Positions 7,301 through 64,000 of a stretch of DNA of 64,000 nucleotides are shown here, in pieces (the first letter of the stretch is position 1; each line of letters opens with the position of its first letter). Under the pieces are notes generated by a model. It worked only from the letters and a program-made list of their open reading frames with translations, made no database searches and was not told where the DNA came from. Source of the DNA: Phyllobates terribilis (taxonomy: Eukaryota); NCBI RefSeq assembly GCF_046119375.1, contig NW_027362767.1, forward strand, positions 165,044,001 through 165,108,000, in the 5' to 3' direction. The position numbers were made by a program, and so were the translations under genes.

Positions 7301-8073
7301 GAAGCATGATTGTTACCTCGCCACCAACACAACAGGGACTTGGTGCTCCTGGATGCGCAACACACATGAGTGCCTTCTTGCTGCACTACCTGCAACATGA
7401 CCCTCGAATTGTGAGAATTAGAAATAATCCTGACTACTGGGTTGCCACACTGTTAGATCCCCGGTACAAAAGTAAATTTGCAGAAATTATTCCTGCCATA
7501 GAAAGGGATGCACGCATGCAGGAGTATCAGCAGAGACTGTTGCAGAATCTTACATGTGCTTTTCCACAAAATACCAGTGGTGCACGTAGTGAATCTCACA
7601 GTTCCAACTTGCCAACCGTGGGACTGTCAAGTGTTCAGCACTCAAACCGTAACAGAACCACAGTATCTGCTGGTAACATCAATTTTGCGGAATCATTTCA
7701 CCACTTTTTTAGCCCATCCTTTGCAAGGCCACAGGAGACAAGAAGTCTGACACATAGTCAACGCCTAGAGACGATGGTACAGGAGTATCTCCAAGTAAAC
7801 ATTGAAGCCACGACTGTGTCACTGGACCCTTGCTCTTTTTGGGCTTCCAATCTGGATAAATGGCCGGAGCTAACCACTTACGCCTTGGAGATCTTGTCAT
7901 GCCCCGCAGCCAGCGTTCTGTCTGAACGTGTGTTCAGCGCTGCTGGTGGTGTGCTGACAGATAAGCGCACGCGGCTCTCCACTGATAATGTAGACAGACT
8001 CACGTTCATAAAGATGAACAAATCATGGATCCGAAACGACTTTTCTACCCCTGTGTCATCCTGGGGAGAGTAA
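4372..8073 (+). pseudogene. hAT (Ac-family, ZBED-like) transposase, ~1230 codons, interrupted by a single in-frame TAG at 7036-7038
   Basis: BED finger (WAFF...CNIC...HMDMKH), FTTDTWTS (Asp1), CDNAANL (Asp2), CMAH (CxxH), TRWNST, LDPRYK, SERVFSAAG (Glu) and a C-terminal dimerisation region. ORFs 4372-7038 and 7042-8073 share one frame. Confidence 0.92.
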
Positions 8074-8289
8074 AAGCTTGATGATTGGTTAAAATCACCC
8101 TACCAACCGTTTTAAGCTTTCAAATTACTAATCATGTTTATCTGTATCTTGACTGGAAAATAATTTGGGCTTTGTAGCAGTGTGCAGCACTGATCCTATT
8201 AGGCCATCTATACTAAAGCTTCACCAGATTTAAAATTAAAATTAATTTTTAGCTGCATCTAGCCCGGAAAATAATTTTGGGGCTCCGAG

Positions 8290-9841
8290 ATGCGCAAGGC
8301 ACATAAGTGCCTTCTTGCTGCACTACCTGCAGCATGACCCTCATATTGTCAGAATTCGAAGTAATCATGACTACTGGGTTGCCACACACTTAGATCCCCC
8401 AAACTTTTCGATCAACCTTTTCATTTTAATAAAGACCAAAAAAATGGTCATTTTTGAAATTATAAGCATTAGCAGGTTGTTAGAAACTGAAATCAAACAG
8501 TTTTCAACTCAAAACTTTATTCTAGGTGATGTTACATTTTCACATAGGACCCCTTGTTCGAAAGGAGCTTCTGAACTCTCTCATCTATTGAATTTGTCAG
8601 GTTTTGGATGGTTTCTGCTTCAATTGTTTTGCATGAGGACAGAATACCCTCCCAGAGCTGTTGCTTAGATGTGAACTGCCTCCCGCCATCATAGACACTC
8701 CTTTTAATGATGCTCCAAAGGTTCTGAATGGGGTAGAGGTCAGGGGAGCATGGGGGTCACACCATAAGTTTGTCCCCTTTTATGCCCATATCAGCCAGAG
8801 ATGCAGATGTTTTATGTGCAGCATGAGATGGTGCATTATCATGCAGAAAAATGATCTTGCTGTGAAATACACGGTTCTTCTTCTTGAACCATGGCAGGAA
8901 GTGCTGTTTGAGAAAATCCACATACATTATGGAGTTCATCTTTAGCGCCTTCAGGGATCCTAAAGGGGCCGACAATCTCTCTCCCCATGATTCCAGCCCA
9001 AAACATTACTCCACCTCCTCCTTGTTGGCGCTGTAGCCGTGTTTGCGTGGGGTGTCCATCAACCAGCCATCCTCCACTCCATCCATCTGGACCATCGAGC
9101 GCTGCACGGCACTCATCCATGAACAAAACAGTTTTGAAATCAGTCTTCATGTAATGTTTGGCCCACTGGAGCCGTTTCTGCTTGTGTGAAGTGGATAGAG
9201 GAGGTCGACAGGATGGCGCATGCACAGCTGCAAACCTCTGAAGGACCCTGCATCTTGTTGTTCGGGGGACGTTGGAGGCACAAGCAGCTTCAAAAACTTG
9301 TCTGCTGCTATGACAAGGCTTTTTTGCCGCTGCTCTTTCAACCTGACGTAATTGCCTGTAGGAAAGAGTCCTCAATTTGCCCTTATCAGCACGCACACGT
9401 GTGTACTGTGAATCAGCTACATACTTCTTGATTGCCAAGACACTTCATCCTGATCATCGCACAATGTTGATTGTAGTCATGCCTTGACCTAAACACTCCA
9501 CAATTAGTTGCTTCTCAGCAGCCGACACATCCTTTTTCTTTCCCATTTTGGCAGAAAATGTAGGCTGCTTAATAATGTGAGAGAGCCTTCTTAAGTAGTC
9601 TTGCCTTTCATTGGACACACCTGTCAAACTAATTAGCACAGGTGTCTGCAATTGCTTACAGTGATATAAAGAGCCCTGACACACATCACCATCAATGAGT
9701 TTAACTGACAAACAAATTCTTCCCTTATCACTCCTAAACACTTTTTGCATAATAATTTGGAACGCAGTGTACATGTGCTTTTCCACAAAACACCAGTGGT
9801 TCACGTAGTGAATCTTACAGTTCTAACTTGCCAACCGTGGT
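8290..9841 (+). pseudogene. Partial duplicate of the family-A transposase 3' region (8290-8400 and 9770-9841), split by a Tc1 insertion
   Basis: 8300-8398 repeats LLHYLQHDPRIVRI (7378-7460). 9770-9841 TACATGTGCTTTTCCACAAAACACCAGTGG repeats 7551-7620. Confidence 0.8.
8400..9769 (-). mobile_element. Tc1-like element, degenerate transposase, one end deleted
   Basis: TIR-like end (reverse complement CACTGCGTTCCAAATTATTATGC) followed by TA at 9770-9771. Minus-strand ORF pieces read MGKKKDVSAAEK..., LFMDEC...DGPDG, VMFWAGI and FLHDNAPSH, with frameshifts. Confidence 0.88.
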
Positions 9842-10295
9842 CTGTATGGAGTTGTTCAATAAAGGGCCCAAAATTAAGATAACATAGATGGGAGAGGTCT
9901 CTATGAATAGGAATTCCTAAGTATTTGATACCCTGTGAGGGCCAGGCAAAGGGAAAGCTGGACTGGATGGAATCCTATATGGATTTGGGGAGGGAGACAT
10001 CGAGGGCCTCAGACTTCGCTGCATTGATTTTAAAATTTTACCATGTAACAAAGTGATCTATTTCAGCCATAACAGCATGGATGGATATATGTGATTGAGT
10101 GATATATACTAGGACATCATCAGCAAATAGAGAGCACTTGTACTCGGTGCCTCCCACCTCAATCCACCTAATATTGGGGTTATGGCGAATTGATGAGAGC
10201 AGGTGCTCCGTCACTAGGATGTATAAGAGAGGGGACAGAGGACATCACTGCCTTGTCCCATTGGTGATTGTGAAAGGTGATGAAAATGTTCTGAC
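9842..10295 (-). mobile_element. L1-clade LINE reverse-transcriptase fragment
   Basis: Minus-strand translation gives ...ITNGTRQ*CPLSPLLYIL...YKCSLFADDVL (GTRQGCPLSP and FADD motifs). Confidence 0.8.
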
Positions 10296-11503
10296 GCACC
10301 CCCTGGGCCTTGGGACACCCGGAGCCGGACCCTTTTTGGTGGATGCTGGTGGTTGTAGTCTTCGAGGCGGCGACCCCGTTCCGTGGCTCAGGGCGGTCAA
10401 ACCAGTGGCGGAACTATTTATGTGGTTTTGATGTTTAAATGTCCGACTACGCCACCCGTGGATTGCGGTCAGAGTGAACCGCCGCTACAGGGCAGACCGC
10501 TGAGGCTGGTGTTGTGGGTGCAGCAGAGCGTAGCATAACTCCCCACGGGAGGAGTATAGCCTCAGGGCAGTGTATGCGGAGGATGGGGGTGATGGTGCAG
10601 GGCAGCAGCAGTAATGACACGGAGTCAGTGATGCAGTTCAGGGCCTTTACTCACAGTTCTTATTATCCAGACCACGTCTGCAGGTAACGGCTGCCCACGT
10701 CGTACTGTGCTCACCAGGTGAGGGGCTCAGACAACTCCCAGATAACTTTGGAGCACTTCACAGGACCCCCTTTGTGTGTCCTTTGTCTGGCCTTTCTTAC
10801 CAACACTTCTGTCCGGCTGCCTCGGGCCTCCTCTTGGTAAACTTGGCGCCAGTTTCCCTGACCCTATGTGGTGCCTTCCTAGCGGGTGTAGCGAGGGGCT
10901 GCGCCACATAAAATGTCAGAGCCTCCGGTTTCTAGCTGAGGGTCGTTTCCTGCCTCCACTAGTTCGGGGACCGGTCTCCCCCTTTGGCCTGACCCCTCCA
11001 CGCAGGTGGATTCGGGCGTGCGGTGGCGACTTGCCCGTCCGCACCCCTGGGATCCCTTCATTCCTCGTTCCTGGAGCCTTCTCCGCTCCTCTTCCTTCCT
11101 TCTCCCTCTTCCAGGCCTGGGCCTTTGTTACTAGGCCCGCCTCCGGAGCAGAGCTCATGCAGAGCCCCTGCTCCCTGCCACTTCTGCTCAGACTTCTCTG
11201 CACTGAACTAAGATGGTGCCCACCTTTTATACTCCCTTCTCAATGCACCCAGGAACTGCTTCCTCCCTGCTCCTGCACTACAGGGTTCCCCTTCCTCAGT
11301 GTTCCCTCCCCCCACTCCAGCCAGGGACAGGGACTGTCGTGCCCATCTCAGGGGCATATTGGTCGCCCTGCCCCACGGCAATGTGGTGTAATGCATGCAG
11401 GTGTCGGGTCCTGATCCACACTCCATCCTTACCTGAGAGTGAGATATCACACCTCTGGGTGAGGTGCAATACGTCTGTAGCAACCGAGCCCTCAGGGTGC
11501 TAC
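10292..11503. mobile_element. Probable solo LTR or non-coding LTR-element fragment
   Basis: GC-rich non-coding block with abrupt boundaries and ends resembling TGACGCACCCC...AGGGTGCTAC. No TSD verified. Confidence 0.35.
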
Positions 11504-11882
11504 TGTTCCATTTATCTTCAGCCTAGGTGACGTATTGCGATACAGGGCCGTGATTTTGGCTATAAAAGGGTCCCCTAGACCCCTACCCCAAGCTTTTTAA
11601 GAGAATCATATATGGCGTGCCAGGAGACTCTATGGAATGCTTTCTCAGCATCCAACGAGAGTATCTAATTACAAATTTTTAACTGCATCTAGCCCAGGAA
11701 ATACTTTGTGCCTAGTAGCAGTGTCTGCTAGTCAGCGGATTATCCCGGCTGTTAAGCCAGCTGCACCACCTGTAGTTTAGACACTTAATTTTTTCAAAGG
11801 AAATGCTTCGGGACCATGGGATTCTTAGTGAAGAGCATAAGGAGGCACCCCAAGGCATAGGGGCTGGGACTGGCAGTAGGAT

Positions 11883-12041
11883 GCCTTGCGGTGGACAGCC
11901 GAGCTCGATCCTTATAAAAGCTTTTTAACTGCAGCAGCTTTAGTGGACGCTACTGGAGCTGGAATTACCGCGGCTGCTGGCATGAGACTTGCCCTCCAAT
12001 AGATCCTTGTAAATGGATTTAAAGTGTATTCATTCAAATTA
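11883..12041 (-). rRNA. 18S rRNA fragment (~160 bp, mutated, non-functional) within the 3' subterminal region of hAT A1
   Basis: The reverse complement contains TTGGAGGGCAAGTCTCATGCCCAGCAGCCGCGGTAATTCCAGCTCCAGTAGCGT...GCTGCTGCAGTTAAAAAGCT, the conserved SSU 530-loop region. No other rDNA is adjacent. Confidence 0.9.
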
Positions 12042-12547
12042 GAGAGACAATTTAAATTAAAAAGCTTAGAGCTGCCTCCACCACAGGGGGGCTCGCTCGA
12101 CCCACCAGCGGACAGGCACCAGCATTGGGAGAGGGGGGCTGGCCGTCAGGGTTCACCGCGGCTCTGGCACAAACCCGGCGACACGGAGGTGGCACGGGCA
12201 GGAGCGGACTGGCCGTGTCGGCTTCTCACTTTTTGGATTTTAGAAGGGCATGACATGCCTATATCTGTGTCTCCCCCTCCTTTTACTCCTCCACCTCTTT
12301 TATTTTCGCATGACTATATGTACTTGTCACTTTTCCATGTGTTAGTTATGTCTTCTGAGCAGTTTGTCAGCTTTTGGACACCTTTGAAGGTGTTTTCTAT
12401 GTGTTTCTATGTGTTTTTGTTTGCCTGCCATTGGTTTTAACGGTGTTCGAAGGTGTTCGACGAACAGTTCGACGAACAGTTCGGCGAACACACGGGTGTT
12501 CGACGAACCGAACCGAACTCGAACACTACGGGGGTGGCTCAACACTA

Positions 12548-35009: not shown

Positions 35010-36662
35010 GCCTGCGCTTCTCAGTGTCTGCGGGATGACAGGCTGGATGGCAGCGTTCTGCTGCGGTCCAGCCTGTCATCTCAATGTAGCAGAGCTGAAG
35101 CTGTCCTGGGAACCATGGAAAGGTAAGGATGAGGTTGCTTTATTATTTTACTTTTATTGCAGGAGATCGTTGGCTTCAGCTGGAATGGGCGTGGTGGTAA
35201 GTATGGTTTAATTTAGAACAATAAAGGATTGTGTCTTTATTTCAATTAAAGGACTTTATTCTGGGTGTTTGTGTTTTCTTTTAACTTTGACTATGGGGTT
35301 AGTAATGGGGGTGTCTTATAGATGCCTCTCCATTACTAACCTGGGCTTGATGTCAGCTGGCATTATAAGCTGACATCAACCCCAGCCCTATTACCCCACT
35401 GCCACCGCTACAGGGCAGTGGGAAGAGCGAGGCTAAGTGCCAGAATTGGCGCATCCTATGGATGCGCCATTTCTGGGGCGGCTGACGGCTGGTGTTTCTA
35501 GCCTGGGAGGGGGCCAATATTCATGGCACCCTTCCTGGGCTATTAATATCAGCCCCCAGCTGTCTGCCTAGCTTTTGCTAGCTATTAAAATAGGGGGGAC
35601 CCCACGTCATTTTTTTGGGAGGGTCCCCCATTTTAATAGCTAGTAAAGGCTAGGTATTCCGCTGGGGGCTGATATTAGTAGCCTGGGAAGCTCCGTGGGT
35701 ATTACCCCCTTCCCAGGCTTCAAACATCTGCCCCAGCCGTCTGCTTAACCTCCGCTAGAGCCTAAAATTACGGGGAACCCCACGCCAATTGTTTTTTAAA
35801 TAAATCCTTTATTTTAACACTAAATGACAAGTACAGTAATCAACACTATCACTGTACTTCGTATATATGTGGCTGACATGTTTCTATCTATCTAATCTAT
35901 GTGTGATGCTCTATTCCTTCTATTCTAAATTGTCGGGTACAAATGCTGAAATGCCGGCCGGCTTTTTTAAAGAGACAGTGCATGAAAACACTATTATTTT
36001 TTTTAATAAATCCTTTACACTAAATGACAAGTACAGTAAGCAACACTGTCACTGTACTTCATATATATGTGACTGACATGTTTCTATCTATCTAATCTAT
36101 GTGTGATTCTCTATTCTTTCTATTCCAAATTGTCGGGTACCGCTGCTGAATTGCCGGCCGGCTTTTTTAAAGAGACGGTGCATTAAAACACTATTATTTT
36201 TTTTGATAAATCCTTTACACTAAATGACAAGTACAGTAAGCAACACTGTCACTGTACTTCATATATATGTGGCTGACATGTTTCTATCTATCTAATCTAT
36301 GTGTGAAGCTCTATTCTTTCGGTTCTAAATTGTCAGGTACCGGTGTATGCCGCTGCTGAATTGCCGGCTTTTCATGTTTCACTGTTGGCACTGTTCCCAT
36401 CGATTTGGGCAATCACTGTAATGCCACAACCACCATGGCTGTGGCATTACAGTGAGTGGCAGACAATCCCTGCATGATTGGTGCTCTAAATAGCGCCAGA
36501 CATGCAGGACAAGCTTTTGGTGCACGAACAGTTATCGAACATAACCTCGAACAGTCGAATTTTTTGCAAATCGTTCGGGTTCGTCGAACAACTCGAACAC
36601 CGCCCAAAACAGCTCGAATTTGAGATTGGCGAACAGTTCTAGTCGAACACCGCTCATCTCTA
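35010..36662 (-). mobile_element. Truncated second copy of the palindromic non-autonomous hAT (left TIR plus the outer arm)
   Basis: TIR GCTCATCTCTA ends at 36662 and is followed by ATCCTTAT. 36380-36662 is the reverse complement of 40405-40690, and 35010-36380 matches 44535-46080. Confidence 0.88.
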
Positions 36663-37997: not shown

Positions 37998-40689
37998 GTA
38001 GATAGGGTTTCCCTCTATGCCAGTCCTTTCACTGAGCTAAATACAACTATCAGCAAAAAAAGTTGTGGACTGGGTCCGTACCGTTCCTGGCCACGTTCTC
38101 CTGTCCATGTGTTTGTGGTTAGGCGGTCCTTCCCAGTAAGAACACTGGGTAGGGCACGGGTAATGTTGTGGGACCCATGCTTGTGGAAGACGGAGGCGAT
38201 ACCGGGAAATATAGTCGCGGCTGGGGACCGAGTATGGACACCCGGCCGCCACCGGCATGAGGTTGTGAAAAGCTTCTTCCTCCACGAGCTTAATAGGCCA
38301 CATTTCAAGTGCAAGCAGCTGTCAAAAATTTGGCAGTATAGTATTGCAGCCTGTGGGTGGGTGGGTGGGTGGCTGGCTGCCTGCATACTTGCGCTTGCAT
38401 TCCAAGGAATGGGGTAGGGACAACTGAACGCTGCAGTGGGACAAGGACGTGGATGGTGATTGTTGCAAGTCTGCAACGACAGGTGCATGGCGGGAGGCAT
38501 CTTCGCATGTGCCAAGGATCACTTATGATGGGCACAATTTTAGGCAGTGACCTGGAAGTCAGAGATGCTTCCAGAGGTCTTCCCTATGCAGTTCCCATGT
38601 CTTTTCAGCACTGTATACATGTGTCTGATGATGTGTCACACACCACATGGCCAAATAAGGTTGTAAAATGTTAAAATTACATTTCCCGGTGAATGCATTT
38701 GTTTTGGTTGAAAGCAATGCAAAAGTACAAAACCGCATCAAAAACGCAACGTGTGAACATAGCCCAAGGTGTGGAGGAGTATTTTTGGTTTTGGTTATTT
38801 ATTTTGTCTTCTATACAAGTCATTACCCTGGAAAGGATGTTCCTTAACATACAGTTATATGAAAAAGTTTGGGCACCCCTATTAATCTTAAGCTTAATGT
38901 TTTATAAAAATTGGTGTTTTTGCAACAGCTATTTCAGTTTGATATATGTAATAACTGTTGGACACAGTAATGTTTCTGCCTTGAAATGAGGTTTATTGTA
39001 CTAACAGAAAATGTGCAATCTGCATTCAAACAAAATTTGACTGGTGCATAAGTATGGGCACCTCACCAGAAAAGTGACATTAATATTTAGTAGATCCTCC
39101 TTTTGCAAAAATAACAGCCTCTAGTCACTTCCTGTAGCTTTTAATGAGTTCCTGGATCCTGGATGAAGGTATTTTTGACCATTCCTCTTTACAAAACAAT
39201 TCCAGTTCAGTTAAGTTTGATGATCGCCGAGCATGGACAGCCCTCTTCAAATGATCCCACAGATGTTCAAGGATATTCCGGTCTGGGGACTGGGATGGCC
39301 ATTCCAGAACATTGTAATTATTCCTCTGCATGAATGTCTGAGTAGATTTGGAGGGGTGTTTTGGATCATTGTCTTGCTGAAAGATCCATCCCCTGCGTAA
39401 CTTCAACTTTATCACTGATTCTTGAACATTATTGTCAGGAATCTGCTGATATTGAGTGGAATCCATGCGTCCCTCAACTTTAACAAGATTCCCGGTGCCG
39501 GTATTGGCCACACAGCCCCAAAGCATGATGGAACCTCCACCAAATTTTACTGTGGGTAGCAAGTGTTTTTCTTGGAATGCTGTGTTTTTTTGCCGCCATG
39601 CATAACGCCTTTTGTATGACCAAACAACTCAATCTTGGTTTCATCAGTCCACAGGACCTTCTTCCAAAAAGAAATTGGCTTCTCCAAATGTGCTTTTGCA
39701 TACCTCAACCGACTCTGTTTGTGGCGTGCTTGCTGAAACGGCTTCTTTCGCATCACTCTCCCATACAGCTTCTCCTTGTGCAAAGTGTGTTGTATAGTTG
39801 ACCGATGCACAGTGACACCATCTGCAACAAGTTGATGATGCAGCTCTCTGGAGGTGGTCTGAGGATTGTCCTTGACTGATCTCACCATTCTTCTTCTCTG
39901 CCTTTCTGATGTTTTTCTTGGCCTGCCACTTCTGGCCTTAACAAGAACTGTCCCTGTGTTCTTCCATTTCCTTACTATGTTCCTCACAGTGGAAACTGAC
40001 AGGTTAAATCTCTGATACAGCTTTTTGTATCCTTCCCCTGAACAACTATGTTGAATAATCTTTGTTTTCAGATCATTTGACAGTTGTTTTGAGGAGCCCA
40101 TGATGCCACTCTTCAGAGGAGGTTCAAACAGGAGAACAACTTGCAAGTGGCCACTTTAAGTAGCTTTTCTCATGATTGCATACACCTGGCTATGAAGTTC
40201 AAAGCTCAATGAGGTTACAAAACCAAAAAAAGTGCTTTAGTACGTCAGTAAAAAGTAGGTAGGAGTATTTAAAACAAGAAAATGATAAGGGTGCCCATAC
40301 TTATGCACCTCTCAAATTTTGTTTGAATGCAGATTGCACATTTTCTGTTAGTACAATAAACCTCATTTCAAGGCAGAAACATTACTGTGTCCAACAGTTA
40401 TTACTAGAGATGAGCGGTGTTCGACTAGAACTGTTCGCCAATCTCAAATTCGAGCTGTTTTGGGCGGTGTTCGAGTTGTTCGACGAACCCGAACGATTTG
40501 CAAAAAATTCGGCTGTTCAAGGTTATGTTCGATAACTGTTCGTGCACCAAAAGCGTGTCCTGCATGTCTGGCGCTATTTAGAGCACCAATCATGCAGGGA
40601 TTGTCTGCCACTCACTGTAATGCCACAGCCATGGTGGTTGTGGCATTACAGTGATTGCCCAAATCGATGGGAACAGTGCCAACAGTGAA

Positions 40690-41270
40690 ACATGAAAAGC
40701 CGGCAATTCAGCAGCGGCATACACCTGTACCCGACAATTTAGAACCGAAAGAATAGAGCTTCACACATAGATTAGATAGATATAAACATGTCAGCCACAT
40801 ATATACGAAGTACAGTGAAAGTGCTGCTTACTGTACTTGTCATTTAGCGTAAAGGATTTATCAAAAAAAATAATAGTGTTTTCATGCACCGTCTCTTTAA
40901 AAAAGCCGGCCGGCAATTCAGCATCTGTACCCGACAATTTAGAATAGAAAGAATAGAGAATCACACATAGATTAGATAGATAGAAACATGTCAGTCACAT
41001 ATATATGAAGTACAGTGACAGTGCTGCTTACTGTACTTGTCATTTAGCGTAAAGGATTTATCAAAAAAAATAATAGTGTTTTCATGCACCGTCTCTTTAA
41101 AAAAGCCGGCCGGCAATTCAGCAGCGGTACCCGACAATTTATAACAGACAGAATAGAGCTTCACACATAGATTAGATAGATAGAAACATGTCAGTCACAT
41201 ATATATGAAGTACAGTGATAGTGTTGGTTACTGTACTTGTCATTTAGTATTAAAATAAAGGATTTATTAT
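40690..41270 (-). repeat. 200-bp tandem repeat (3 copies) in the left arm of the palindromic element
   Basis: GTCATTTAG occurs at 40839, 41039 and 41239. Confidence 0.9.
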
Positions 41271-44200
41271 TAAAAAAATTGGCGTGGAGTTCCCCTTAAT
41301 TTTAGGCTCTAGCGGAGGTTAAGCAGACGGCTGGGGCAGATGTTTGAAGCCTGGGAAGGGGGTAATACCCACGGAGCTTCCCAGGCTACTAATATCAGCC
41401 CCCAGCTGAATACATAGCCTTTACTAGCTATTAAAATGGGGGACCCCCCCAAAAAAATGACGTGGGGTCCCCCCTAATTTAATAGCTAGCAAAGGCTAGG
41501 CAGACAGCTGGGGGCTGATATTAATAGCCCAGGAAGGGAGCCATGAATATTGGCCCCCTCCCAGGCTAGAAACACCAGCCGTCAGCCGCCCCAGAAATGG
41601 CGCATTCATAGGATGCGCCAATTCTGGCACTTAGCCTCGCTCTTCCACGCTGCCCTGGTGCGGTGGCAGGGGGTAATAGGGTTGGGGTTGATGTCAGCTT
41701 ATAATGCCAGCTGACATCAAGCCCAGGTTAGTAATGGAGAGGCGTCTATAAGACACCCCCATTACTAACCCCATAGTCAAAGTTAAAAAAAACACAAACA
41801 CCCAGAATAAAGTCCTTTAATTGAAATAAAGACACAATCCTTTATTGTTCTAAATTAAACCATACTTACCGTCACGCCCATTCCAGCTGAAGCCAACGAT
41901 CTCCTGCAATAAAAGAAAAATAATAAAGCAACCTCATCCTTACCTTTCCATGGTTCCCACGACAGCTTCAGCTCTGCTACATCGAGATGACAGGCTGGAC
42001 CGCAGCAGAACGCTGCCATCCAGCCTCTCATCCCGCAGACACTGAGAAGCGCAGGCTTGCTTGCGCTGCTCAGCGTCTCTCTGTGACGACATCCAGATGA
42101 GCCGAGTTCATGTCCAATGAACTCGGCTCACCTCATGCACGTCACTGACAGCGTGGGAAAATTCTCACGCTGAAGCGGTGAGTGCAGGAGAATTCTCCCA
42201 CGCTGTCAGTGACGTGCATAAGGTGAACTCATGTCCAATGAACTCAGCTCACCTCCTGCACGTCACTGACAGCGTGGGAGAATTCTCCTGCACTCAGCGC
42301 TTCAGCGTGAGAATTCTCCCACGCTGAAGCGCTGAGTGCAGGAGAATTTTCCCACGCTGTCAGTGACGTGCATAAGGTGAGCTCATGTCCAATGAACTCC
42401 GCTCACCTCCTGCACGTCACTGACAGCGTGGGAGAATTCTCCTGCACTCAGCGCTTCAGTGTGAGAATTCTCCCACGCTGAAGCGCTGAGTGCAGGAGAA
42501 TTTTCCCACGCTGTCAGTGACGTGCATGAGGTGAGCCGAGTTCATTGGACATTAACTCGGCTCATCTGGATGCCCTCACAGAGAGACACTGTGGAGCGCA
42601 AGCAAGCCTGCGCTTCTCAGTGTCTGCGGGATGACAGGCTGGATGGCAGCGTTCTGCTGCGGTCCAGCCTTTCATCTCGATGTAGCAGAGCTGAAGCTGT
42701 CATGGGAACCATGGAAAGGTAAGGATGATGTTGCTTTATTATTTTTCTTTTATTTCAGGAGATCGTTGGCTTCAGCTGGAATGGGCGTGATGGTAAGTAT
42801 GGTTTAATTTAGAACAATAAAGAATTGTGTGTTTATTTCAATTAAAGGACTTTTTTCTGGGTGTTGTGTTTTTTTTAAATACTTTACTAGAAATTCATGG
42901 TGGTCATGTCTAATATTGGCGTGACCCCATGAATTTCGGGCTTAGGGCCAGCTGATAATGCCAAGCTGGCCCTAACCCCTTCATTACCCAGTGAGCCACC
43001 GCATCAGGGCCCTGGATGAGTTGGGTACAGCGCCAGAAGATGGCGCTTCTATGAACGCGCCATTTTCCGGGGTGGCTGCGGACTGCAATTTGCAGCGGGG
43101 GTGGCCCAGAAAGCTTGGGCCTCCCTGCGCTGCGGATTCCAGCCCCCAGCTGCCTAGTTGTACCTGCCTGGACACAAAAACAGGGCGAAGCCCCACGTCA
43201 ATTTTCTTTAAATTATTTCATGAAATAATTAAGAAAAAAAGGGCTTCCCTATATTGTTGTGTCCGGCCAGGTACAAATAGGCAGCTGGTGGTTGGGGGCA
43301 GCCCGTTCCTGCCTGCTGTACCTGGCTGGACACAAATATAGTGCGAAGCCCCACGTCAATTTTTTTTAAATTATTTCATGAATTTCCTGAAATAATTTAA
43401 AAAAATTGAAGTGGGGCTTCGCACTATATTTGTGTCCAGCCAGGTACAGCAGGCAGGAACGGGCTGCCCCCATCCACCAGCTGCCTATTTGTACCTGGCC
43501 GGACACAACAATATAGGGAAGGCCTTTTTTTCTTAATTATTTCATGAATTTCATGAAATAATTAAAAAAAAAGTACGTGGGGCTTCGCCCTATTTTTGTG
43601 TCCAGCCAGGTACAACTAGGCAGCTGTGGGCTGGAATCTGCAGCGCAGGGAGGCCCAAGCTTTCTGGGCCCCCCCCCCGCTACAAATTGCAGTCCGCAGC
43701 CACCCCGGAAAATGGCGCGTTCATAGAAGCGCCATCTTCTGGCGCTGTACCCAACTCATCCAGGGCCCTGGTGCGGTGGCTCAATGGGTAATAAAGGGGT
43801 TAGGGCCAGCTTGGTATTATCAGCTGGCCCCAAGCCCAAAATTCATGGGGTCACGCCAGTATTAGACATGACCGCCATGAATTTCTAGTAAAGTATTTAA
43901 AAAAAACACAACACCCAGAATAAAGTCCTTTAATTGAAATAAAGACACAATTCTTTATTGTTCTAAATTAAACCATACTTACCATCACACCCATTCCAGC
44001 TGAAGCCAACGATCTCCTGCAATAAAAGAAAAATAATAAACCAACCTCATCCTTACCTTTCCATGGTTCCCACGACAGCTTCAGCTCTGCTACATCGAGA
44101 TGACTGGCTGGACCGCAGCAGAACGCTGCCATCCAGTCTGTCATCCCGCAGACACTGAGAAGCGCAGGCATGCTTGCGCTCCTCACTGTCTCGCTGTGAC

Positions 44201-45319
44201 GGCATCCAGATGAGCCGAGGTCATGTCCAATGAACTCGGCTTACCTCATGCACGTCACTGACAGCGTGGGAAAATTCTCACGCTGAAGTGCTGAGTGCAG
44301 GAGAATTCTCCCACGCTGTCAGTGATGTGCATGAGGTGAGCTCATGTCCAATGAACTCAGCTCACCTCCTGCACGTCACTGACAGCGTGGGAAAATTCTC
44401 CTGCAATCAGCGCTTCAGCGTGAGAATTTTCCCACGCTGCCAGTGACGTGCATGAGGTGAGCCGAGTTCATTGGACATGAACTCGGCTCATCTGGATGTC
44501 GTCACAGAGAGACGCTGAGCAGCGCAAGCAAGCCTGCGCTTCTCAGTGTCTGCGGGATGACAGGCTGGATGGCAGCGTTCTGCTGCGGTCCAGCCTGTCA
44601 TCTCGATGTAGCAGAGCTGAAGCTGTCGTGGGAACCATGGAAAGGTAAGGATGAGGTTGCTTTATTATTTTTCTTTTATTGCAGGAGATCGTTGGCTTCA
44701 GCTGGAATGGGCGTGATGGTAAGTATATTTTAATTTAGAACAATAAAGGATTGTGTCTTTATTTCAATTAAAGGACTTTATTCTGGGTGTTTGTGTTTTT
44801 TTAAACTTTGACTATGGGGTTAGTAATGGGGGTGTCTTATAGACGCCTCTCCATTACTAACCTGGGCTTGATGTCAGCTGGCATTATAAGCTGACATCAA
44901 CCCCAACCCTATTACCCCCTGCCACCACACCAGGGCAGCGTGGAAGAGCGAGGCTAAGTGCCAGAATTGGCGCATCCTATGAATGCGCCATTTCTGGGGC
45001 GGCTGACGGCTGGTGTTTCTAGCCTGGGAGGGGGCCAATATTCATGGCTCCCTTCCTGGGCTATTAATATCAGCCCCCAGCTGTCTGCCTAGCCTTTGCT
45101 AGCTATTAAATTAGGGGGGACCCCACGTCATTTTTTTTGGGGGGTCCCCCATTTTAATAGCTAGTAAAGGCTATGTATTCAGCTGGGGGCTGATATTAGT
45201 AGCCTGGGAAGCTCCGTGGGTATTACCCCCTTCCCAGGCTTCAAACATCTGCCCCAGCCGTCTGCTTAACCTCCGCTAGAGCCTAAAATTAAGGGGAACC
45301 CCACGCCAATTTTTTTAAT

Positions 45320-46105
45320 AATAAATCCTTTATTTTAATACTAAATGACAAGTACAGTAACCAACACTATCACTGTACTTCATATATATGTGACTGACAT
45401 GTTTCTATCTATCTAATCTATGTGTGAAGCTCTATTCTGTCTGTTATAAATTGTCGGGTACCGCTGCTGAATTGCCGGCCGGCTTTTTTAAAGAGACGGT
45501 GCATGAAAACACTATTATTTTTTTTGATAAATCCTTTACGCTAAATGACAAGTACAGTAAGCAGCATTGTCACTGTACTTCATATATATGTGACTGACAT
45601 GTTTCTATCTATCTAATCTATGTGTGAAGCTCTATTCTGTCTGTTATAAATTGTCGGGTACCGCTGCTGAATTGCCGGCCGGCTTTTTTAAAGAGACAGT
45701 GCATGAAAACACTATTATTTTTTTAAATAAATCCTTTACACTAAATGACAAGTACAGTAAGCAACACTATCACTGTACTTATTATATATGTGACTGACAT
45801 GTTTCTATCTATCTAATCTATGTGTGAAGCTCTATTCTTTCTGTTCTAAATTGTCGGGTACAGATGCTGAATTGCCGGCCGGCTTTTTTAAAGAGACGGT
45901 GCATGAAAACACTAATATTTTTTTTAATAAATCCTTTACACTAAATGACAAGTGCAGTAACCAACACTGTCACTGTGCTTCTTATATGTGTGACTGACAT
46001 GTTTCTATCTATCTAATCTATGTGTGATGCTCTATTCCTTCTTGTCTAAATTGTCGGGTACCGGTGTATGCCGCTGCTGAATTTGCCGGCCGGCTTTTTT
46101 AAAGA
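45320..46105 (+). repeat. 200-bp tandem repeat (~4 copies) in the right arm
   Basis: CTAAATGACAAGT occurs at 45341, 45541, 45741 and 45941. Confidence 0.9.
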
Positions 46106-47159
46106 GAGTGTTTTCTGAGCAGTTTGTCAGCTTTTGGACACCTTTGCAGGTGTTTTCTATGTGTTTCTATGTGTTTTTGTTTGCCTGCCATTGGTTTTAA
46201 CGGTGTTCGACGGTGTTCTAAGGTGTTCGACGAACAGTTCGACGAACAGTTCCTCGAACATCCCGGTGTTCGACGAACCGAACCGAACCCGAACACAACG
46301 GGGGTGGCTCAACACTAGTTATTACATATATCAAACTGAAATAGCTGTTGCAAAAACACCAATTTTTATAAAACATTAAGCTTAAGATAAATAGCGGTGC
46401 CCAAACTTTTTCATATAACTGTATTTCCCAGGAAAATCCATTTTGGTTTAGTTTTTGTATGTTTTATTGTGAGTCCGTAAAAGTGGTGTAATACTCTGAC
46501 AATGTTGTTAACAGCAGTGACCTGGGAGTCAGAAATGCTTCCAGGGGTCTTCCCCATGCTGTTCCCATGTCATTTGAGCACTGTTCCCATTGATTTGGGC
46601 AATTTTTAGGCCCTCTGCAGACCGCCGGGGGGAGCCGCCTGAAAAATGCTCTAGTTTTCCATAGACTTGCATTGGGCTCGTTGCTCGGGTCGAGCACCCG
46701 AGTATTCCAATTTGCTCGACCCGAGCAACGAGTACCCGAGCATTTTAGTGCTCGCTCATCACTAATCTCAAGCTCAATATCAATGCAATTAGGGAGGGTT
46801 TGGTCCTTTTTTTTTGCATTTTGGTCTTCAAAAATGGAAGAGTGGCCTGAGCTTGCCTGTCACGCCATGGCAGTTTTGTCATGCCCAGCAACCAGCATTC
46901 TCTCAGAATGAGTCTACAGCGCTGCGGGTGGTGTCCTGACAGATAAGCGCATTCGGCTGTACCCTGAAAGTGTAGAAAAACTAACTTTCATCAAGATTAA
47001 CAAGCCATGGATCTCCAAGGACTTTTGCACCCCAATCACAGACTGTGAAGACTAGGCAATGGTGTAGTTTTTAGTGTGCTGCATTGATCTCACGTTATTG
47101 CAGTCTGTGACCTTTGTCATGGATTTTGTGCCTGCTGTTGCTACTGCTGCTGATGTTGT

Positions 47160-50800: not shown

Positions 50801-52199
50801 AGTGAATCAGTGCCATAGTGCTGTGCTGCAATATTATTTAAAGGCCCAGTGTGTGGAGCTATTATTTTTAAGGGGGGCACTCATATGATGCTGATACATT
50901 CAGGGGTACAATGTGTTTAGCAGTATTATGTTTCAAGAGCACAGTGTCTGTAGCACCATTATATTGATAGGCGCAATGCATAGTGTTTTTATATTAAGGG
51001 TGTGCAATGTATTTTACTATTATATTCAGGGGATGTACTCTGTAGAGATACTATTTTCAGGGTGCACAACACGTGCCATTATTATATTCAGAAATAATTG
51101 TATATAGCAGTGAACAACATGTGCCAGTATATTCAGGGCACACAGTATGTAGCATAATTATTTTTCGGGAACACAATGTGCACCAATATTATATTTAGTG
51201 GGAATAGTGAGTGGAACTACAAGTATTTGTATTAGGCTTGAGTATAAGAAAAGTCAAAGATATCAGAATTATACACTACAGAGAATTGTGAGAGCAGGAG
51301 AAGTCATCATGATGGTCTGGATTGGATGGAAAATAAAAGGAAGAAGAATCACTCCAATTAGAGAAGTCAGCTCTAAATCACTGGGTGTGAATGTGTATTA
51401 TCCTTGATATCCATCAGTGTTGGATTAATTGTATGGTCTACAATGAAGATGTCTACTACTAACCTACTGTAGATTTTGAAAGATTACTAATTTTATATTT
51501 AGGACCCAATAAACAATTAATCATGTTGGAAATCGATCTTTAAAGAACTATGGACTGTTGACAGGGCTAGCAGAATGAGTTGCAAAACCATTATTATTTT
51601 TTCATTATTCGATAACCGCTATAGATCTATGATGACCGCAGATGACTTCTGAGTGGTAATGAGTGAATTGATTCAATAGAAATAGAATTCATGCTGAATT
51701 TTTAGGAATTAACTAAATCTTGCAAATTCAAACAATATGAGATTAGCTTCACATGAATGGCTTAAAATAGCCACCATCATTTTACACATTGCAGAAGATT
51801 GCATGAGCCATAGAAGAATCTCAAGTAGAACCAGCAAATGCTATTTTGTGTTGAATCTGGATACGTCACAGCATAGAGTGTGTGAAGAAAGGAGAATTAT
51901 ATAGATTTAATTGATAGCTCTATTTCTAATGGATAGATTGCAGTAGGCACTTAACATTTGTTCAAAAGAAAAAATCTTTAGGATCTGTAGAGATCTATTC
52001 TGCTGACATAATTTCTTTATACTCACCTTAGATCAGTTTTCTCTGTCCAGAGTAATTCTACTGTAGGTAGTTCATCAAGGCATCTAACATTGGGTAAATC
52101 CTGTGATCTTTAGTTTGCAGGGTTTTGGTGACTATGCTTTACAAGACCAAATGTTACAGTATATATTTGTAAGCAGTGTGGAAACTATTTCATGGTTAA

Positions 52200-59897: not shown

Positions 59898-60929
59898 ATG
59901 CCCCCCAACCCTCCACAGTGATGTCTATGACCCCAGCCCGGCTTAGAGATATCTATGCCCACCAGCCCTCCCAGTGATGTCTGTAGTCCCATACCTTCCC
60001 AGTGATGTCTAGACTAGAGATGAGCGTTGTTCTACTCGAACTGTTCGCCAATCTCAAATTCGAGCTGTTTTGGGCGGTGTTCGAGCCGGTCGGCGAACAC
60101 AAACAATTTGAGAAAAATTCGGCTGTTCGAGGTTATGTTCGATAACTGTTCGTGCACCAAAATCATAACTGGATTTTTTCTCAGTAATGATGAAAATTAA
60201 TGTTAATACGCAGTTTGAGTGTACAGCGGGGCGGGGGGAGGGGCAGGGGATGGATCTCTGCAGGAACAATGAAGATCTCCATTTTTTTTTCTCTTTCCCG
60301 CATTTGCAGTGGGGAGGTGCAATCTGTCAGCCTATCAGCAGCGCACACACGGAGCGAAGTGCTTTTTTTCACACAAGCAAGGGCATGTCTGATTGGCAGT
60401 GTATGTCACATGTCCTTGTCCTATAAGACCAAGCCATTTTCCCCGTCGCCACCATTTTCTCACTGCTGCAGCTGCGTGTTAGACGGCACCGCTGTTGCTG
60501 TGTGCGCTATACCTTGTTAATTTCAAGCCAATTTTTGCACAAATATACAGATAGCTTGGGAGTAGGGAATAGTTGTGATTGCAGTCCTTTTAAGGACTAG
60601 GTTACAGCATTTCCTACGACTTTTATCAAGCAGGTCTGTGCTCTTAAATAGATAGATTGTGGGAGTAAAGACTAATTGTAATTGGAGTCCTTTTCAGGAC
60701 TAGGATACATCAGTTCCTATCAGTTTTTGCCAGGCAGGTCTGTACCAGTGCTGTGCAAGTTTTTTTCACAGCATTTGGCTGAATCTAGCAAAGCTAATCC
60801 TTTTTGGCCTATTGCAGAGTGTGTTAGTCAGTGGAGTAGCCTATCTGTGTTGCAAGATATACCACCTGTGTATAGAATACCAATTTTTTTACTGCACCTA
60901 GTGAAGTAAAATCTTTTGGGCTTAGCATC

Positions 60930-61660
60930 ATTCTATTAGTCCATCTATACTGACCTCCATCAGGTTGCAAATTAAAAATAATTTTTTTCTGCATCTAGCT
61001 CTGAAAAAATATTTGGGCTTCTAGCAGTGTGTGGGACTTGGTCTATTAGTCCATCTATACTGACCTCCATCAGGTTGCAAATTAAAAATAATTTTTTTCT
61101 TCATTTATCTCTGAAAAAATATATGGGCTTCTAGCAGCGTGTGGGACTTGTTCTATTAGTCCATCTATACTGACCTCCATCAGGTTGCAAATTAAAAATA
61201 ATTTTTTTCTGCATCTAGCTCTGAAAAAATATTTGGGCTTCTAGCTGTGTGTGGGACTTGTTCTATTAGTCCTTCTATACTGACCTCCAGCAGGTTGCAA
61301 ATTGAATATAATTTTTTTCTGCATCTAGCTCTGAAAAAATATTTGGGCTTCTAGCGGTGTGTGGGACTTGGTCTTTTAGTCCATCTATACTGACCTCCAT
61401 CAGGTTGCAAATTAAAAATAATTTTTTTCTGCATCTAGCTCTGAAAAAATATTTGGGCTTCTAGCAGTGTGTGGGACTTGGTCTATTAGTCCATCTATAC
61501 TGACCTCCATCAGGTTGCAAATTGAATAAAAAAAATTTCTGCATCTAGCTCTGAAAAAATATTTGGGCTTCTAGCGGTGTGTGGGACATGGTCTATTAGT
61601 CCATCTATACTGACCTCCATCAGGTTGCAAATTAAAAATAATTTTTTTCTGCATCTAACC
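60930..61660 (+). repeat. 110-bp family-A satellite (7 monomers)
   Basis: CTGACCTCCA occurs at 60950, 61060, 61170, 61280, 61390, 61500 and 61610. Confidence 0.95.
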
Positions 61661-61773
61661 CAGCCAATAGTTTTGGCCTAATACCACAGTTTGGCCACTC
61701 AGCTCTGCTCGGTTACCATCCATTGTTTTTTTGTGCAAACAACTCCAGAGTTGTGAATTAGTTAACCACCAAA

Positions 61774-64000
61774 ATGAGTGGAAAAAGGCCTGCTGCTGGT
61801 GGAAAGGGGAATAGGCGTGTTGGGAAGGGGAAAAAAGGTTGTGTCAAACTAAAATGTCTACTTCTTTTAGCGGACAATGTGATAAGATCCCTTTCTTACG
61901 GCCACGCCAATCGCTACAAATTCCAGATGAGGCACAAAAACAGCAGGTGCTTCAACGGATATCAAGTGCTCCTTTAAGTGGGCTCTCCTCCACATCAACT
62001 TCAACATCACAAATACTCCAGTCCTCAAAGGTGTCACCCAAATCGCACTTGCTTCCTCACAGCTCCCAAATCTCCAGCTGCCCGTCTGAGTATGAGGTAG
62101 AACAGATGGTTGAGTCTGCAGAGCTGTTTACTCATACTATAGCCTGGGAATCAGAGGTCGACTCCAGCGCTTCTGTGAATCCAGACGAGGAAATGATCTG
62201 CACTGATGCCCAGAATCTTTATGAGTCGGATCCAGGACCAGACGCAGAAGGTTCTGACCATAATGTAGACCCTCATTCCCAAACTGTAACTCCTGTTGGT
62301 GGAGACAATGAGGAAGACGATGATAAGACTCAAATACCTGATTGGAGCGACAACTTTAGTTTTTTGTCAGGGCAGGAACAGGTTGGCTCTGAGGACGACG
62401 GGTGTGATAACGCACAGGGTGATGATGATGAGGTCGGAGATCCCACTTACTGTCAACCCACAGTCAGCCAAGAGATGAGGTCAGCAGAGGAGGTGGAGGA
62501 AGATGCTAGTGACGACGAGGTCAGGTTGCGCCGTCCTGGACAGAGACGTAGTACTGGAAGCACGTCAACAACTGCATCCTCAAACACAACTCTGCCTCTC
62601 ACCACAAGTCGTGGTGGCTCTTCAGGTCGCATGGGTGCTAAGCCTTGCATAGCCTGGGCATTTTTTCAGATCGATAAAGATGACCCAACTCGTGTTATCT
62701 GTAACATTTGTCAGCAAAAGCTAAGTAGAGGCCAAAAAATACATAGTTTGAGTACTTCATGCATGAACCGGCACATGGACATGAAGCATAAGTTGCAGTG
62801 GGAAGCTCAGTGTGCTACAATGCGGTCTAGCCGGCCGGGCCAACCACCGTCTGCCATATCTTGTGCATCCGCGGCCTCTTCATCCTCTGTGACTGGGGTG
62901 ACAGCAGTCACACCTGTTTTGGGGCGCAGACCTGCCACCTCTTTACCCGCAACAGCCAGCGTGATTGGCAGGTCATCATTTTCTTTGGAGGTGGTAACAC
63001 CATCTGGTCTTGAGCGCTGTCCGACATCGATAGCACCACCTTTGGATCAAGGCAACCTAACATGTCCGCCTGCATCTTCCTCACAGACCGGCAGTTTGCC
63101 GGGGACACCCTTATCAACCCCGTCTAAGCACAATAGCCAACCGTCGGTCCCTCAGATGTGGACAAGTAAAAGACCATTTCCTCCTAGCCATGAGAAAGCT
63201 AAGAGGTTGAATTTCACCATCTGCAAGCTCTTGGCTACAGAAATGCTGCCTTTCCGCCTGGTGGACACAGAGGATTTTCGAGACCTTATGTCCGTCGCAG
63301 TGCCCCAGTACCAGATGCCCAGTCGGCACTACTTCTCAAAGAAAGGTGTGCCTGCGCTCCACCAGCATGTCACACACAACATCACCGCTTCTTTGAGAAA
63401 CTCTGTGTGTGACAGGGTGCATTTCACCACAGGCACTTGGACGAGTAGGCATGGACAGGGGCGTTACATGTCGCTGACTGGGCACTGGGTAACTATGGTG
63501 ACAGCAGGACAAGGGGCTGCTGTCCAAGTCTTGCCGTCCCCACGAGTTGTGCGTCAATCCTCTTTATGTCAAAGTTCCTCCACTGCTTCTGCCTCCTCAT
63601 CCTCCTCTCGGTCTTCCACCTGCACCCAAAGCCTGTCTGGTCATGCCACAAGCTTTCTAACTGCGCAGAAGGGATCCTGCACACCTCCTTACTATGCTGG
63701 CAGTAGGGCTCAACGTCATCAGGCGGTTTTTACATTGAAATGTCTGGGAAATGTGAGTCACACAGCTGAGGAGTTGTGGTCAGCTCTGGAGAACCAATTT
63801 CATGAATGGTTGTCTCCACTGGACCTGAAACCAGGGAAGGCCGTGTGCGACAATGCTGCAAACCTGGGTGCGGCCCTTCGCCGGGGCAATGTCACACACG
63901 TGCCTTGTATGGCTCACGTGTTGAACCTGGTTGTCCAGCAATTTTTAGCCCACTATCCCAGACTAGATGGCCTTCTGCAGAGGGCACGGTCGCTGTGTGC
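61774..64000 (+). CDS. hAT transposase A2: a 58-bp deletion frameshifts the first ATG; frame apparently open from ATG 61854 (Met47 equivalent) to the window end
   Basis: The offset to A1 is 57402 at the ATG and 57344 from there to the window end. The same BED, TW and CDN/CMAH motifs are present, but the first catalytic Asp codon reads GGC (TTGTW) at ~63432. Confidence 0.75.

What the first reader, a model, noticed from the sequence alone, without database searches (positions are those of the whole stretch)
40405..46317. 5.9-kb 'fractal palindrome' transposon: a mobile, nearly spacer-free 5.4-kb hairpin with palindromes nested at four scales
Seen: TIRs and a perfect 8-bp TSD (GTTATTAC) show it moved as a unit. 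The interior from ~40690 to ~46090 is an inverted repeat centred at ~43383 with a ~1-nt spacer (TTATTTCATGAA-T-TTCCTGAAATAA). Each arm has its own inverted repeat (centres ~42330 and ~44350, so block B occurs four times in alternating orientation). The central block has sub-palindromes at ~43220 and ~43545. The arm centres are arrays of perfect 13-bp hairpins (GAGCCGAGTTCAT-GTCCA-ATGAACTCGGCTC). Established: long spacerless palindromes extrude cruciforms, are fragile and give dsRNA if transcribed; typical MITEs are far smaller. Inference: this is a foldback-type hAT family built by repeated inverted duplication that still transposes.
Basis: partly seen in the sequence, partly recalled or inferred. 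Interest (0 to 1): 0.85.

Follow-up and report, generated by a model that had tools for sequence, protein, structure and literature searches.

The report
Frog hAT transposon carrying 5.4-kb palindrome
A real, high-copy, non-coding "passenger" transposon of the hAT type in a frog genome whose whole cargo is a 5.4-kb nearly spacer-free palindrome. It is a useful natural test case for how vertebrate genomes tolerate and reshape long palindromes, but it is a variant of known transposon kinds, not a new kind.

Summary
Window 40405-46317 is a 5,913-bp element with imperfect TAG... terminal repeats and a perfect 8-bp target duplication. An uninterrupted copy of the target lies in the same window: the other terminal repeat of the Tc1-like element it landed in. 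Its ends (148 and 209 bp, 91% identical) match a BED-finger hAT transposase element also in the window, so it is a non-autonomous hAT.

Positions 40699-46090 form a palindrome centred on 43383 with a 1-nt spacer. The arms are 96.9% alike. A fold-back assembly artefact is unlikely: the arms differ by substitutions and repeat numbers, and the two ends are different.

The "fractal" look has a simpler cause: two nested inverted duplications plus tandem arrays of units that are themselves palindromic.

Outer arm pairs (99%) are more alike than inner ones (95%). A second, truncated copy at 35010-36662 differs by 2.5%, so the inner palindrome probably predates this insertion.

Short-read contigs show every block is highly repeated in this species.

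The scan noted similar palindrome-filled hATs at six other places in this genome. I could not read them.

Not shown: long-read support, current activity, small RNAs, absence from Repbase/Dfam.

The parts
40397..40404 (.). Left copy of the 8-bp target-site duplication, GTTATTAC
   Evidence: It occurs once in the uninterrupted paralogous site.
40405..40698 (+). Left terminus. The imperfect terminal repeat starts at 40405. Subterminal GTTCGR motifs are present. Positions 40405-40552 are shared with the autonomous hAT.
   Evidence: 91% identical to 60015-60162, and 99% identical to the second copy at 36367-36662. Motif cluster.
40699..41250 (+). Block A: 200-bp tandem array, 2.6 units. This is the outermost part of the left palindrome arm.
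   Evidence: It pairs with 45541-46090 at 93.8% and with 45341-45866 at 96.2%.
41250..41783 (+). Block X: hairpin-rich module with its own 82% internal inverted repeat centred near 41456
   Evidence: pair I22. X versus X' differs at 3 of 534 positions.
41783..42099 (-). B1, the outer-left copy of block B
42100..42565 (.). Left H array: tandem 154/121-bp units that are themselves palindromic, bracketed by 13-bp hairpins. It is the centre of the left arm-level palindrome (42331).
42566..42880 (+). B2, the inner-left copy of block B
42880..43139 (+). C0, a diverged homologue (about 70-77% identical) of block X
   Evidence: alignment A3
43139..43629 (.). c array: three ~160-bp palindromic units. 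The global centre is at 43383 and the sub-centres at about 43217 and 43551.
43629..43896 (-). C0', the mirror copy of C0
   Evidence: 95.7% identical to C0
43897..44210 (-). B3, the inner-right copy of block B
44210..44490 (.). Right H array, one unit shorter than the left one. It is the centre of the right arm-level palindrome (44350.5).
44490..44805 (+). B4, the outer-right copy of block B
44805..45338 (-). X', the mirror copy of X
   Evidence: 99.44% identical to X
45340..46090 (-). A': 200-bp tandem array, 3.6 units, the mirror of A
46091..46317 (+). Right terminus with a GTTCGR motif cluster. Positions 46109-46317 are shared with the autonomous hAT.
   Evidence: 90.9% identical to 12349-12547. 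Motif cluster.
46318..46325 (.). Right copy of the target-site duplication, GTTATTAC
38849..39062 (-). Left long terminal repeat of the host Tc1-like element (38849-46424). It is the uninterrupted paralogue of the insertion site.
   Evidence: 98% identical to 40290-40404 plus 46317-46424. Alignment A1 shows the 8-mer once.
35010..36662 (-). Second copy of the family, holding the left terminus, A, X and most of B. It is truncated 44 bp before the H array.
   Evidence: 96.6-96.9% identical to 40405-42056
60015..64000 (+). Autonomous hAT copy: a left terminus like the finding's, a 110-bp array, and the start of the transposase gene. It runs off the window.
4372..12547 (+). Autonomous hAT copy. 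It holds a BED-finger open reading frame (4372-7038) and a hAT dimerisation open reading frame (7042-8073) in the same frame, separated by one stop. Its right terminus is 12349-12547.

Best explanation
This is a high-copy, non-coding, non-autonomous hAT transposon of a frog. A BED-finger hAT transposase element, of which two copies lie in the same window, presumably moves it in trans. The transposase would recognise only the ~150-210-bp termini with their GTTCGR motifs.

The cargo is unrelated to the autonomous element. It is a 5.4-kb imperfect palindrome, and I infer it was built in steps:
1. A short hairpin next to block B seeded an inverted duplication, giving B-H-B'.
2. A second inverted duplication, at a short AT-rich palindrome in the c unit, mirrored the whole left half. 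This gave four B copies.
3. The palindromic units in H and c, and the 200-bp A unit, then changed in number.

The likely mechanism of the duplications is fold-back (snap-back) priming or intrastrand template switching. This could happen during repair of the double-strand gap left by excision, or at stalled forks.

Arm-to-arm copying later re-homogenised the outer arms.

The finished structure then transposed as one unit into the terminal repeat of a Tc1-like element.
For: Shown:
- The 8-bp duplication and terminal repeats are present.
- An in-window empty site exists.
- Empty-site contigs skipping 5,921 bases with 9 shared letters occur in runs X2, X3, X9 and X10.
- The termini match an element with zf-BED (E = 9.5e-10) and Dimer_Tnp_hAT (E = 9.5e-16).
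- GTTCGR clusters occur only at the five termini of this family in the window.
- The element has no internal termini, so it is not a dimer.
- It has no open reading frame over 116 aa and no protein homologue.
- The cargo blocks occur in the window only inside the two copies of this family.
- Summed word depth is 3e5-8.8e5 over every 200-base bin in the DNA runs, with more than 42,000 contigs laid per run.
- Five informative sites group the B copies as (B1,B4,copy 2) against (B2,B3).
- Mismatches are 8/852 between outer arms, 20/805 between the two genomic copies and 35/806 between inner arms (outer versus inner p = 9e-6).
- In the second hairpin of the X and C0 homologues, all four stem differences are matched by complementary changes.

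Inferred:
- The fold-back or template-switch mechanism. Fold-back inverted duplications at breaks are documented in yeast (PMC11724301), and template switching in gap repair is proposed for the origin of MITEs (miniature inverted-repeat elements) (PMC3814204).
Against: - No other full-length copy could be read here. The second copy is truncated before the first centre.
- Short-read contigs cannot tell a palindrome from a half element away from its centres.
- The excess of inner-arm over inter-copy divergence is only borderline (p = 0.054).
- The outer arms are closer to each other than to the second copy. Part of the palindrome could therefore have formed or been rebuilt after the two lineages split, even after insertion.
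- The transition:transversion ratio is about 1:1, which is unusual for neutral decay. It is the same between arms as between copies.
- No intact transposase was seen. The copy read to its end has an in-frame stop, and the other runs off the window.
Confidence: 0.8

Rival explanations
1. A smaller, simpler non-autonomous hAT inserted here, for example L-A-X-B-...-R or a 3.8-kb single palindrome. Most of the present palindrome then arose at this locus afterwards, by local inverted duplication or fold-back repair.
For: The outer arms X/X' (3/534) and B1/B4 (5/316) are closer to each other than either is to the second copy (14-15/531 and 6-7/274). Unverified scan notes list shorter palindromic hATs of 3,756 and 3,258 letters in this genome.
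Against: Inner-arm divergence (4.3%) exceeds both the divergence between the two independent copies (2.5%) and that between the host Tc1 terminal repeats (about 2%). The copy-2 B groups with the outer B type, so the inner and outer B types had already separated before the two copies split. Scan notes list three other elements of 5,863-6,374 letters with 5.3-5.4-kb palindromes (not verified).
Confidence: 0.1
2. Assembly artefact: a fold-back chimeric long read or a mis-join created the inversion.
For: No long-read run was available. The DNA runs laid are short-read contigs and may include the sample that was assembled.
Against: - The arms differ by 77 substitutions and 15 gap events, and by repeat number.
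- Divergence varies by block, from 0.6% to 4.8%.
- The two ends are different (L versus R), match the two different ends of the autonomous element, and restore a continuous Tc1 repeat when removed. A fold-back chimera would give L...L' and near-identical arms.
Confidence: 0.03
3. A composite made by independent insertions: two elements in opposite orientation (a dimer or 'double Ds' type), or palindromic miniature elements nested one in another.
For: Tail-to-tail hAT dimers are noted elsewhere in this genome. Contigs with R end, 8 bp, then L end exist.
Against: No terminal motif cluster or terminal repeat lies inside the element. The junctions B/C0, X/B and A/X are mirrored exactly on both arms, which points to duplication and not to separate insertions. 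The cargo blocks are not found alone anywhere else in the window.
Confidence: 0.04

Closest known systems
Non-autonomous hAT elements (Ds-like internal-replacement derivatives; hAT-N entries of repeat libraries; hAT miniature elements such as Mar in Drosophila, PMC3517528)
   Same: The 8-bp duplication, short imperfect terminal repeats, subterminal transposase-binding-type repeats, termini shared with an autonomous partner, and no coding capacity.
   Different: It is 5.9 kb, not a few hundred bp. The interior is not a deletion derivative of the autonomous element. It is a foreign cargo that forms a 5.4-kb palindrome with a 1-nt spacer.
Foldback elements of Drosophila, and Galileo of the P superfamily (PMC3688188, PMC4168063)
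   Same: Kilobase-scale inverted repeats that contain tandem arrays, variable repeat numbers between the arms, and high structural diversity.
   Different: In those elements the long inverted repeats are the termini themselves. Their duplications are 9 bp (FB) or 7 bp (Galileo), and their transposases are MULE-like or P-like. Here the outer 294 and 227 bp are unlike each other, the duplication is 8 bp and the partner is a BED-hAT.
Inverted-duplication derivatives of DNA transposons (maize 'double Ds'; Mu killer, see bioRxiv 10.1101/2020.01.09.900282)
   Same: A DNA-transposon derivative with a long inverted duplication that can form a hairpin.
   Different: Those derivatives duplicate transposon or transposase sequence, are single loci, and (Mu killer) silence the family. 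Here the duplicated sequence is non-transposase cargo, has no internal termini, and appears to belong to a high-copy family.
Genomic long inverted repeats (LIRBase, PMC8728187)
   Same: The arms are longer than 400 nt and more than 80% alike, so a long hairpin RNA is possible if the region is transcribed.
   Different: In the one genome (rice) where LIRBase compared them with transposons, a large share of catalogued repeats are two adjacent transposon copies on opposite strands with a loop between them. This one lies inside a single element and has a 1-nt spacer.

Membership tests
hAT superfamily, non-autonomous member | 8-bp target-site duplication | tested here: met
   GTTATTAC lies on both sides and occurs once in the uninterrupted paralogous site and in empty-site contigs.
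hAT superfamily, non-autonomous member | Target fits the nTnnnnAn preference (known from Ac, hobo and Hermes; recalled from my own knowledge) | tested here: met
   GTTATTAC has T at position 2 and A at position 7. The autonomous copy's right flank, GTCATTAC, fits as well.
hAT superfamily, non-autonomous member | Short imperfect terminal inverted repeats | tested here: met
   9 of the first 13 bases match; both ends start with TAG.
hAT superfamily, non-autonomous member | Termini shared with an element that encodes a hAT transposase | tested here: met
   The left 148 bp and right 209 bp are 91% identical to the ends of an element with zf-BED and Dimer_Tnp_hAT open reading frames.
hAT superfamily, non-autonomous member | No transposase of its own | tested here: met
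   The longest open reading frame is 116 aa. A homologue search found nothing, and there is no similarity to the autonomous interior.
hAT superfamily, non-autonomous member | Mobilised by the partner transposase at present | not testable with these tools
   Only a past insertion is shown. The transposase copy read to its end has an in-frame stop at 7036-7038.
Foldback (FB) / Galileo-type elements | Long inverted repeats that reach the element's very ends | tested here: not met
   Beyond 13 bp, the outer 294 bp and 227 bp do not pair with each other.
Foldback (FB) / Galileo-type elements | 9-bp (FB) or 7-bp (Galileo) target duplication | tested here: not met
   The duplication is 8 bp.
MITE (miniature inverted-repeat element) | Small size, usually under about 800 bp | tested here: not met
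   The element is 5,913 bp.
Transposon dimer / 'double Ds' | Internal copies of the element's termini | tested here: not met
   No internal terminal repeat or GTTCGR cluster is present.
Described repeat-library family (Repbase/Dfam) | Sequence match to a curated consensus | not testable with these tools
   No repeat library is available. A full-text search for the terminal and hairpin strings gave only chance hits.

The most novel reading that the evidence does not exclude
The palindromic cargo is not passive junk. It is kept palindromic by arm-to-arm copy correction or by selection on the element, because intrastrand folding brings the two termini to within about 500 bp of each other. A 5.9-kb element would then synapse and transpose as efficiently as a miniature one, which would explain its very high copy number. 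Three observations point that way: the hairpin stems of the old paralogues X and C0 changed by fully compensated substitutions; the outer arms are 99% alike; and the palindrome starts right after the transposase-binding termini.
Probability: 0.12. Interest if true: 0.8.

Novelty: new variant of a known kind. Interest (0 to 1): 0.5.

Why it matters
Palindromes of a few hundred bp with short spacers are reported to be unstable in mouse and yeast. Here a vertebrate genome appears to hold very many dispersed copies of one 5.4-kb palindrome with a 1-nt spacer.

If the family census confirms this, the copies form a natural mutation-accumulation series. They could be used to measure how palindromes decay or are homogenised. 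This copy already shows outer arms at 0.9% divergence and inner arms at 4.3%. The series could also show whether divergence at the centre stabilises palindromes, and how often they break; the second copy ends 44 bp before a centre.

The element also bears on three other matters:
- how non-autonomous DNA transposons acquire foreign cargo;
- genome assembly quality in large amphibian genomes;
- possible long-hairpin sources of small RNAs.

Tried and rejected
Searches that found nothing:
- Exact-product look-ups of two repeat-borne open reading frames to fetch other copies: nothing on record.
- Homologue search with the 116-aa central open reading frame: no hit.
- Metagenome scan with the 20-nt left terminus: no hit.
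- Rfam at E <= 1: only sub-threshold generic microRNA-hairpin matches (best 55 bits against a cut-off of 105), and no hammerhead.
- tRNA scan to test a SINE (tRNA-derived retroposon) origin: none.
- Look-up of scan notes by sequence: blank.
- Paper searches for the terminal and hairpin strings and for frog fold-back hATs: only chance or unrelated hits.

Readings rejected:
- Dimer or nested insertion, because there are no internal termini.
- Assembly chimera, because the ends are unlike and the arms have diverged.
- A cargo derived from the autonomous element, because there is no similarity even at word size 7.

Limits of the data:
- The one read-laying run used short-read contigs only, so long-range structure could not be checked.
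- The empty-site contigs could be Tc1 paralogues and need not be an empty allele. Polymorphism of this insertion is therefore undecided.
Full report
**What is there**

The stretch 40405-46317 (5,913 bp) starts with TAGAGATGAGCGG. It ends with the complement of TAGTGTTGAGCCA, so 9 of the first 13 bases match between the ends. GTTATTAC flanks it on both sides.

The element sits inside the right long terminal repeat of a Tc1-like element that spans 38849-46424. That element's left repeat (38849-39062) is 98% identical to 40290-40404 plus 46317-46424. In the alignment it reads straight through the site with the 8-mer present once (alignment A1). This is an empty-site control inside the window.

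Contigs from four public runs of the same species also join 40395 to 46317. They skip 5,921 bases and share nine letters across the joint. These may be other Tc1 copies and not an empty allele, so polymorphism of this insertion is open.

The insertion of the whole 5.9 kb as one piece, with an 8-bp duplication that fits the hAT preference nTnnnnAn, is therefore solid.

**Family**

- The first 148 bp are 91% identical to 60015-60162, and the last 209 bp are 91% identical to 12349-12547.
- The element that begins at 60015 continues into a 110-bp array and then matches 4501-6656 at 99.1%.
- That second stretch lies in an 888-aa open reading frame with a BED zinc finger. A same-frame open reading frame with the hAT dimerisation domain follows it.
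- The motif GTTCGR clusters (4-8 per 200 bp, against 0.125 expected) only at these five termini.

So the finding is a non-autonomous partner of a BED-hAT family that is present twice in the window. It codes for nothing recognisable. Its interior shares nothing with the autonomous element.

A second copy lies at 36662 to 35010 on the minus strand. It is 96.6-96.9% identical over the left terminus, A, X and most of B, and it ends 44 bp before the first hairpin array.

**Anatomy of the palindrome**

The block order is L, A, X, B1, H, B2, C0, c | c', C0', B3, H, B4, X', A', R.

- The arms run from 40699 to 46090 around base 43383.
- A gapped alignment gives 96.9% identity, with 77 mismatches and 15 gap events.
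- Each arm is itself a palindrome around an H array, with centres at 42331 and 44350.5.
- H is a tandem array of a 154-bp unit that is itself a near-perfect 147-nt hairpin (-79 kcal/mol, z = -20).
- The c block is three ~160-bp palindromic units.
- The central 1.5 kb folds as a single hairpin of -890 kcal/mol.

A tandem array of palindromic units has a symmetry centre every half unit. Part of the 'fractal' impression is therefore automatic. Two nested inverted duplications plus array expansion are enough to produce the structure.

**Order of events**

Five informative sites split the B copies into (B1, B4, copy-2 B) against (B2, B3) (alignment A2). This is the pattern expected if B-H-B' formed first and the whole half was mirrored later.

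The arms are not equally diverged:

| Comparison | Mismatches | Divergence |
|---|---|---|
| Outer arm pairs (X/X', B1/B4) | 8/852 | 0.9% |
| This element versus the second copy (X and B) | 20/805 | 2.5% |
| Inner arm pairs (B2/B3, C0/C0', c/c') | 35/806 | 4.3% |

- Outer versus inner: p = 9e-6.
- Inner versus between copies: p = 0.054.
- Private changes in the B copies are 2 and 2 (B1, B4) against 8 and 7 (B2, B3): p = 0.02.

I read this as follows. The inner palindrome is older than the split of the two genomic copies, so it travelled with the element. The outer arms were later homogenised or rebuilt by arm-to-arm copying. The alternative, that the outer part grew after insertion, is kept as a rival.

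**An older layer**

X and C0 are homologous over about 350 columns at roughly 70-77% identity (alignment A3). Both carry two hairpins at the same places (z = -4.7 to -7).

In the second hairpin the 12-bp stems differ at four positions per arm, and all four differences are complementary:
- X: TTGATGTCAGCT / AGCTGACATCAA
- C0: TTAGGGCCAGCT / AGCTGGCCCTAA

Independent point mutation cannot give that. One arm must have templated the other, or the stem is under selection. Arm-templated copying would also explain the 99% outer arms.

**Abundance and expression**

In two DNA runs from different studies, every 200-base bin has a summed word depth of 3e5-8.8e5. More than 42,000 contigs were laid, most of them at least 99% alike. 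A run with only 10 million letters of contigs still holds 47% of the sampled words, and a second species label holds 47%.

The cargo is thus as abundant as the termini. These are short-read contigs, so they cannot show the long-range order.

In an RNA-labelled run the A arrays and termini reach depths of 7,000-14,000, while the centre has 165-1,000. The DNA profile is flat. The signal is therefore not simple DNA carry-over, but neither its strand nor its origin is known.

**Is it an artefact?**

That is unlikely, for four reasons:
- The arms differ by substitutions and repeat numbers.
- Divergence varies by block.
- The two ends are different and match the two different ends of the autonomous element.
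- Removing the element restores a continuous Tc1 repeat.

No long reads were available, so the direct check is still owed.

**Earlier notes of this scan**

Six first-reader notes describe non-autonomous hATs filled by palindromes of palindromes elsewhere in this genome. Three of them are 5,863, 5,869 and 6,374 letters long, close to the size of this element. Two are shorter, at 3,756 and 3,258 letters.

A follow-up on another locus calls the host a frog and describes hAT copies sharing one 8-bp target. This fits the R end, CTCATAAG, L end contigs seen here.

I could not read those sequences, so they are leads and not support.

**Comparison with known kinds**

By its defining features this is a non-autonomous hAT. 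It resembles Foldback and Galileo elements only in having kilobase inverted repeats with internal arrays. It fails their defining features: the inverted repeats do not reach the ends, and the duplication is not 9 or 7 bp.

Inverted-duplication derivatives such as double Ds or Mu killer duplicate transposon sequence and are single loci.

Long inverted repeats as such are common in vertebrate genomes. In rice, the one genome where LIRBase compared them with transposons, a large share are neighbouring transposon copies (PMC8728187).

I found no description of this family in the papers held. I could not compare it with Repbase or Dfam.

**Verdict**

It is real, well delimited and mechanistically readable. 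It is a new variant of a known kind, and of moderate interest.

Noticed in passing
window 38849-46424: A Tc1-like element with unusually long (~214-bp) terminal repeats, 98% alike. An open reading frame with HTH_Tnp_Tc3_2 and Sleeping-Beauty-type helix-turn-helix domains lies at 39547-40146 (-). The hAT sits in its right repeat.
   Followed up: partly
window 4372-8073 and 60015-64000: Two copies of a BED-finger hAT autonomous element are 99.1% alike over 2,156 bp. The first has one in-frame stop at 7036-7038 between the BED and dimerisation parts, and has no left terminus within the window. A 110-bp tandem array (2495-4443; 60931-61845) precedes the gene.
   Followed up: partly
runs X2 and X3, laid on window 46317 / 40405: Contigs join the element's right end to its left end with exactly 8 letters (CTCATAAG) between them, at depth 412 and 213. 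This means head-to-tail copies 8 bp apart somewhere in the genome, or a joined-ends form.
   Followed up: no
window 40370-46350, run X10: In the RNA-labelled run, depth is 7,000-14,000 on the A arrays and termini but 165-1,000 on the central C block. The DNA runs are flat. Relative to DNA, the centre of the hairpin is depleted about 70-fold.
   Followed up: no
window 35010: The second copy of the family stops 44 bp before the position of the first hairpin array and continues into unrelated sequence. This may be a palindrome-associated break or deletion.
   Followed up: partly
window 40559-40657 and 17573-17675: A small hairpin-bearing segment just inside the left terminus is shared (82%) with another hAT-like element, whose terminal-repeat-like start TAGTGATGAGTG is at 17455. 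Weaker matches lie at 46558-46603 and 12706-12749. The termini of the different hAT families look mosaic.
   Followed up: no
window 44600-44735 (block B, four copies): Block B has exon-like signals: ACCATGGAAAG followed by GTAAGG, then TTGCAG, 34 bases, and GTAAGT. This may be a captured gene fragment. No splice joints were seen in the RNA run.
   Followed up: no
window 40405-46317 versus the whole window: The CpG observed/expected ratio is 0.65 in the element and 0.46 in the window, which fits a comparatively young repeat. Transitions and transversions are about equal, both between arms and between copies.
   Followed up: partly
window 52103-53185 and 28304-29788: An intact-looking olfactory receptor open reading frame (7tm_4, E = 1e-47) and a reverse-transcriptase open reading frame (RVT_1, E = 2e-35).
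   Followed up: no
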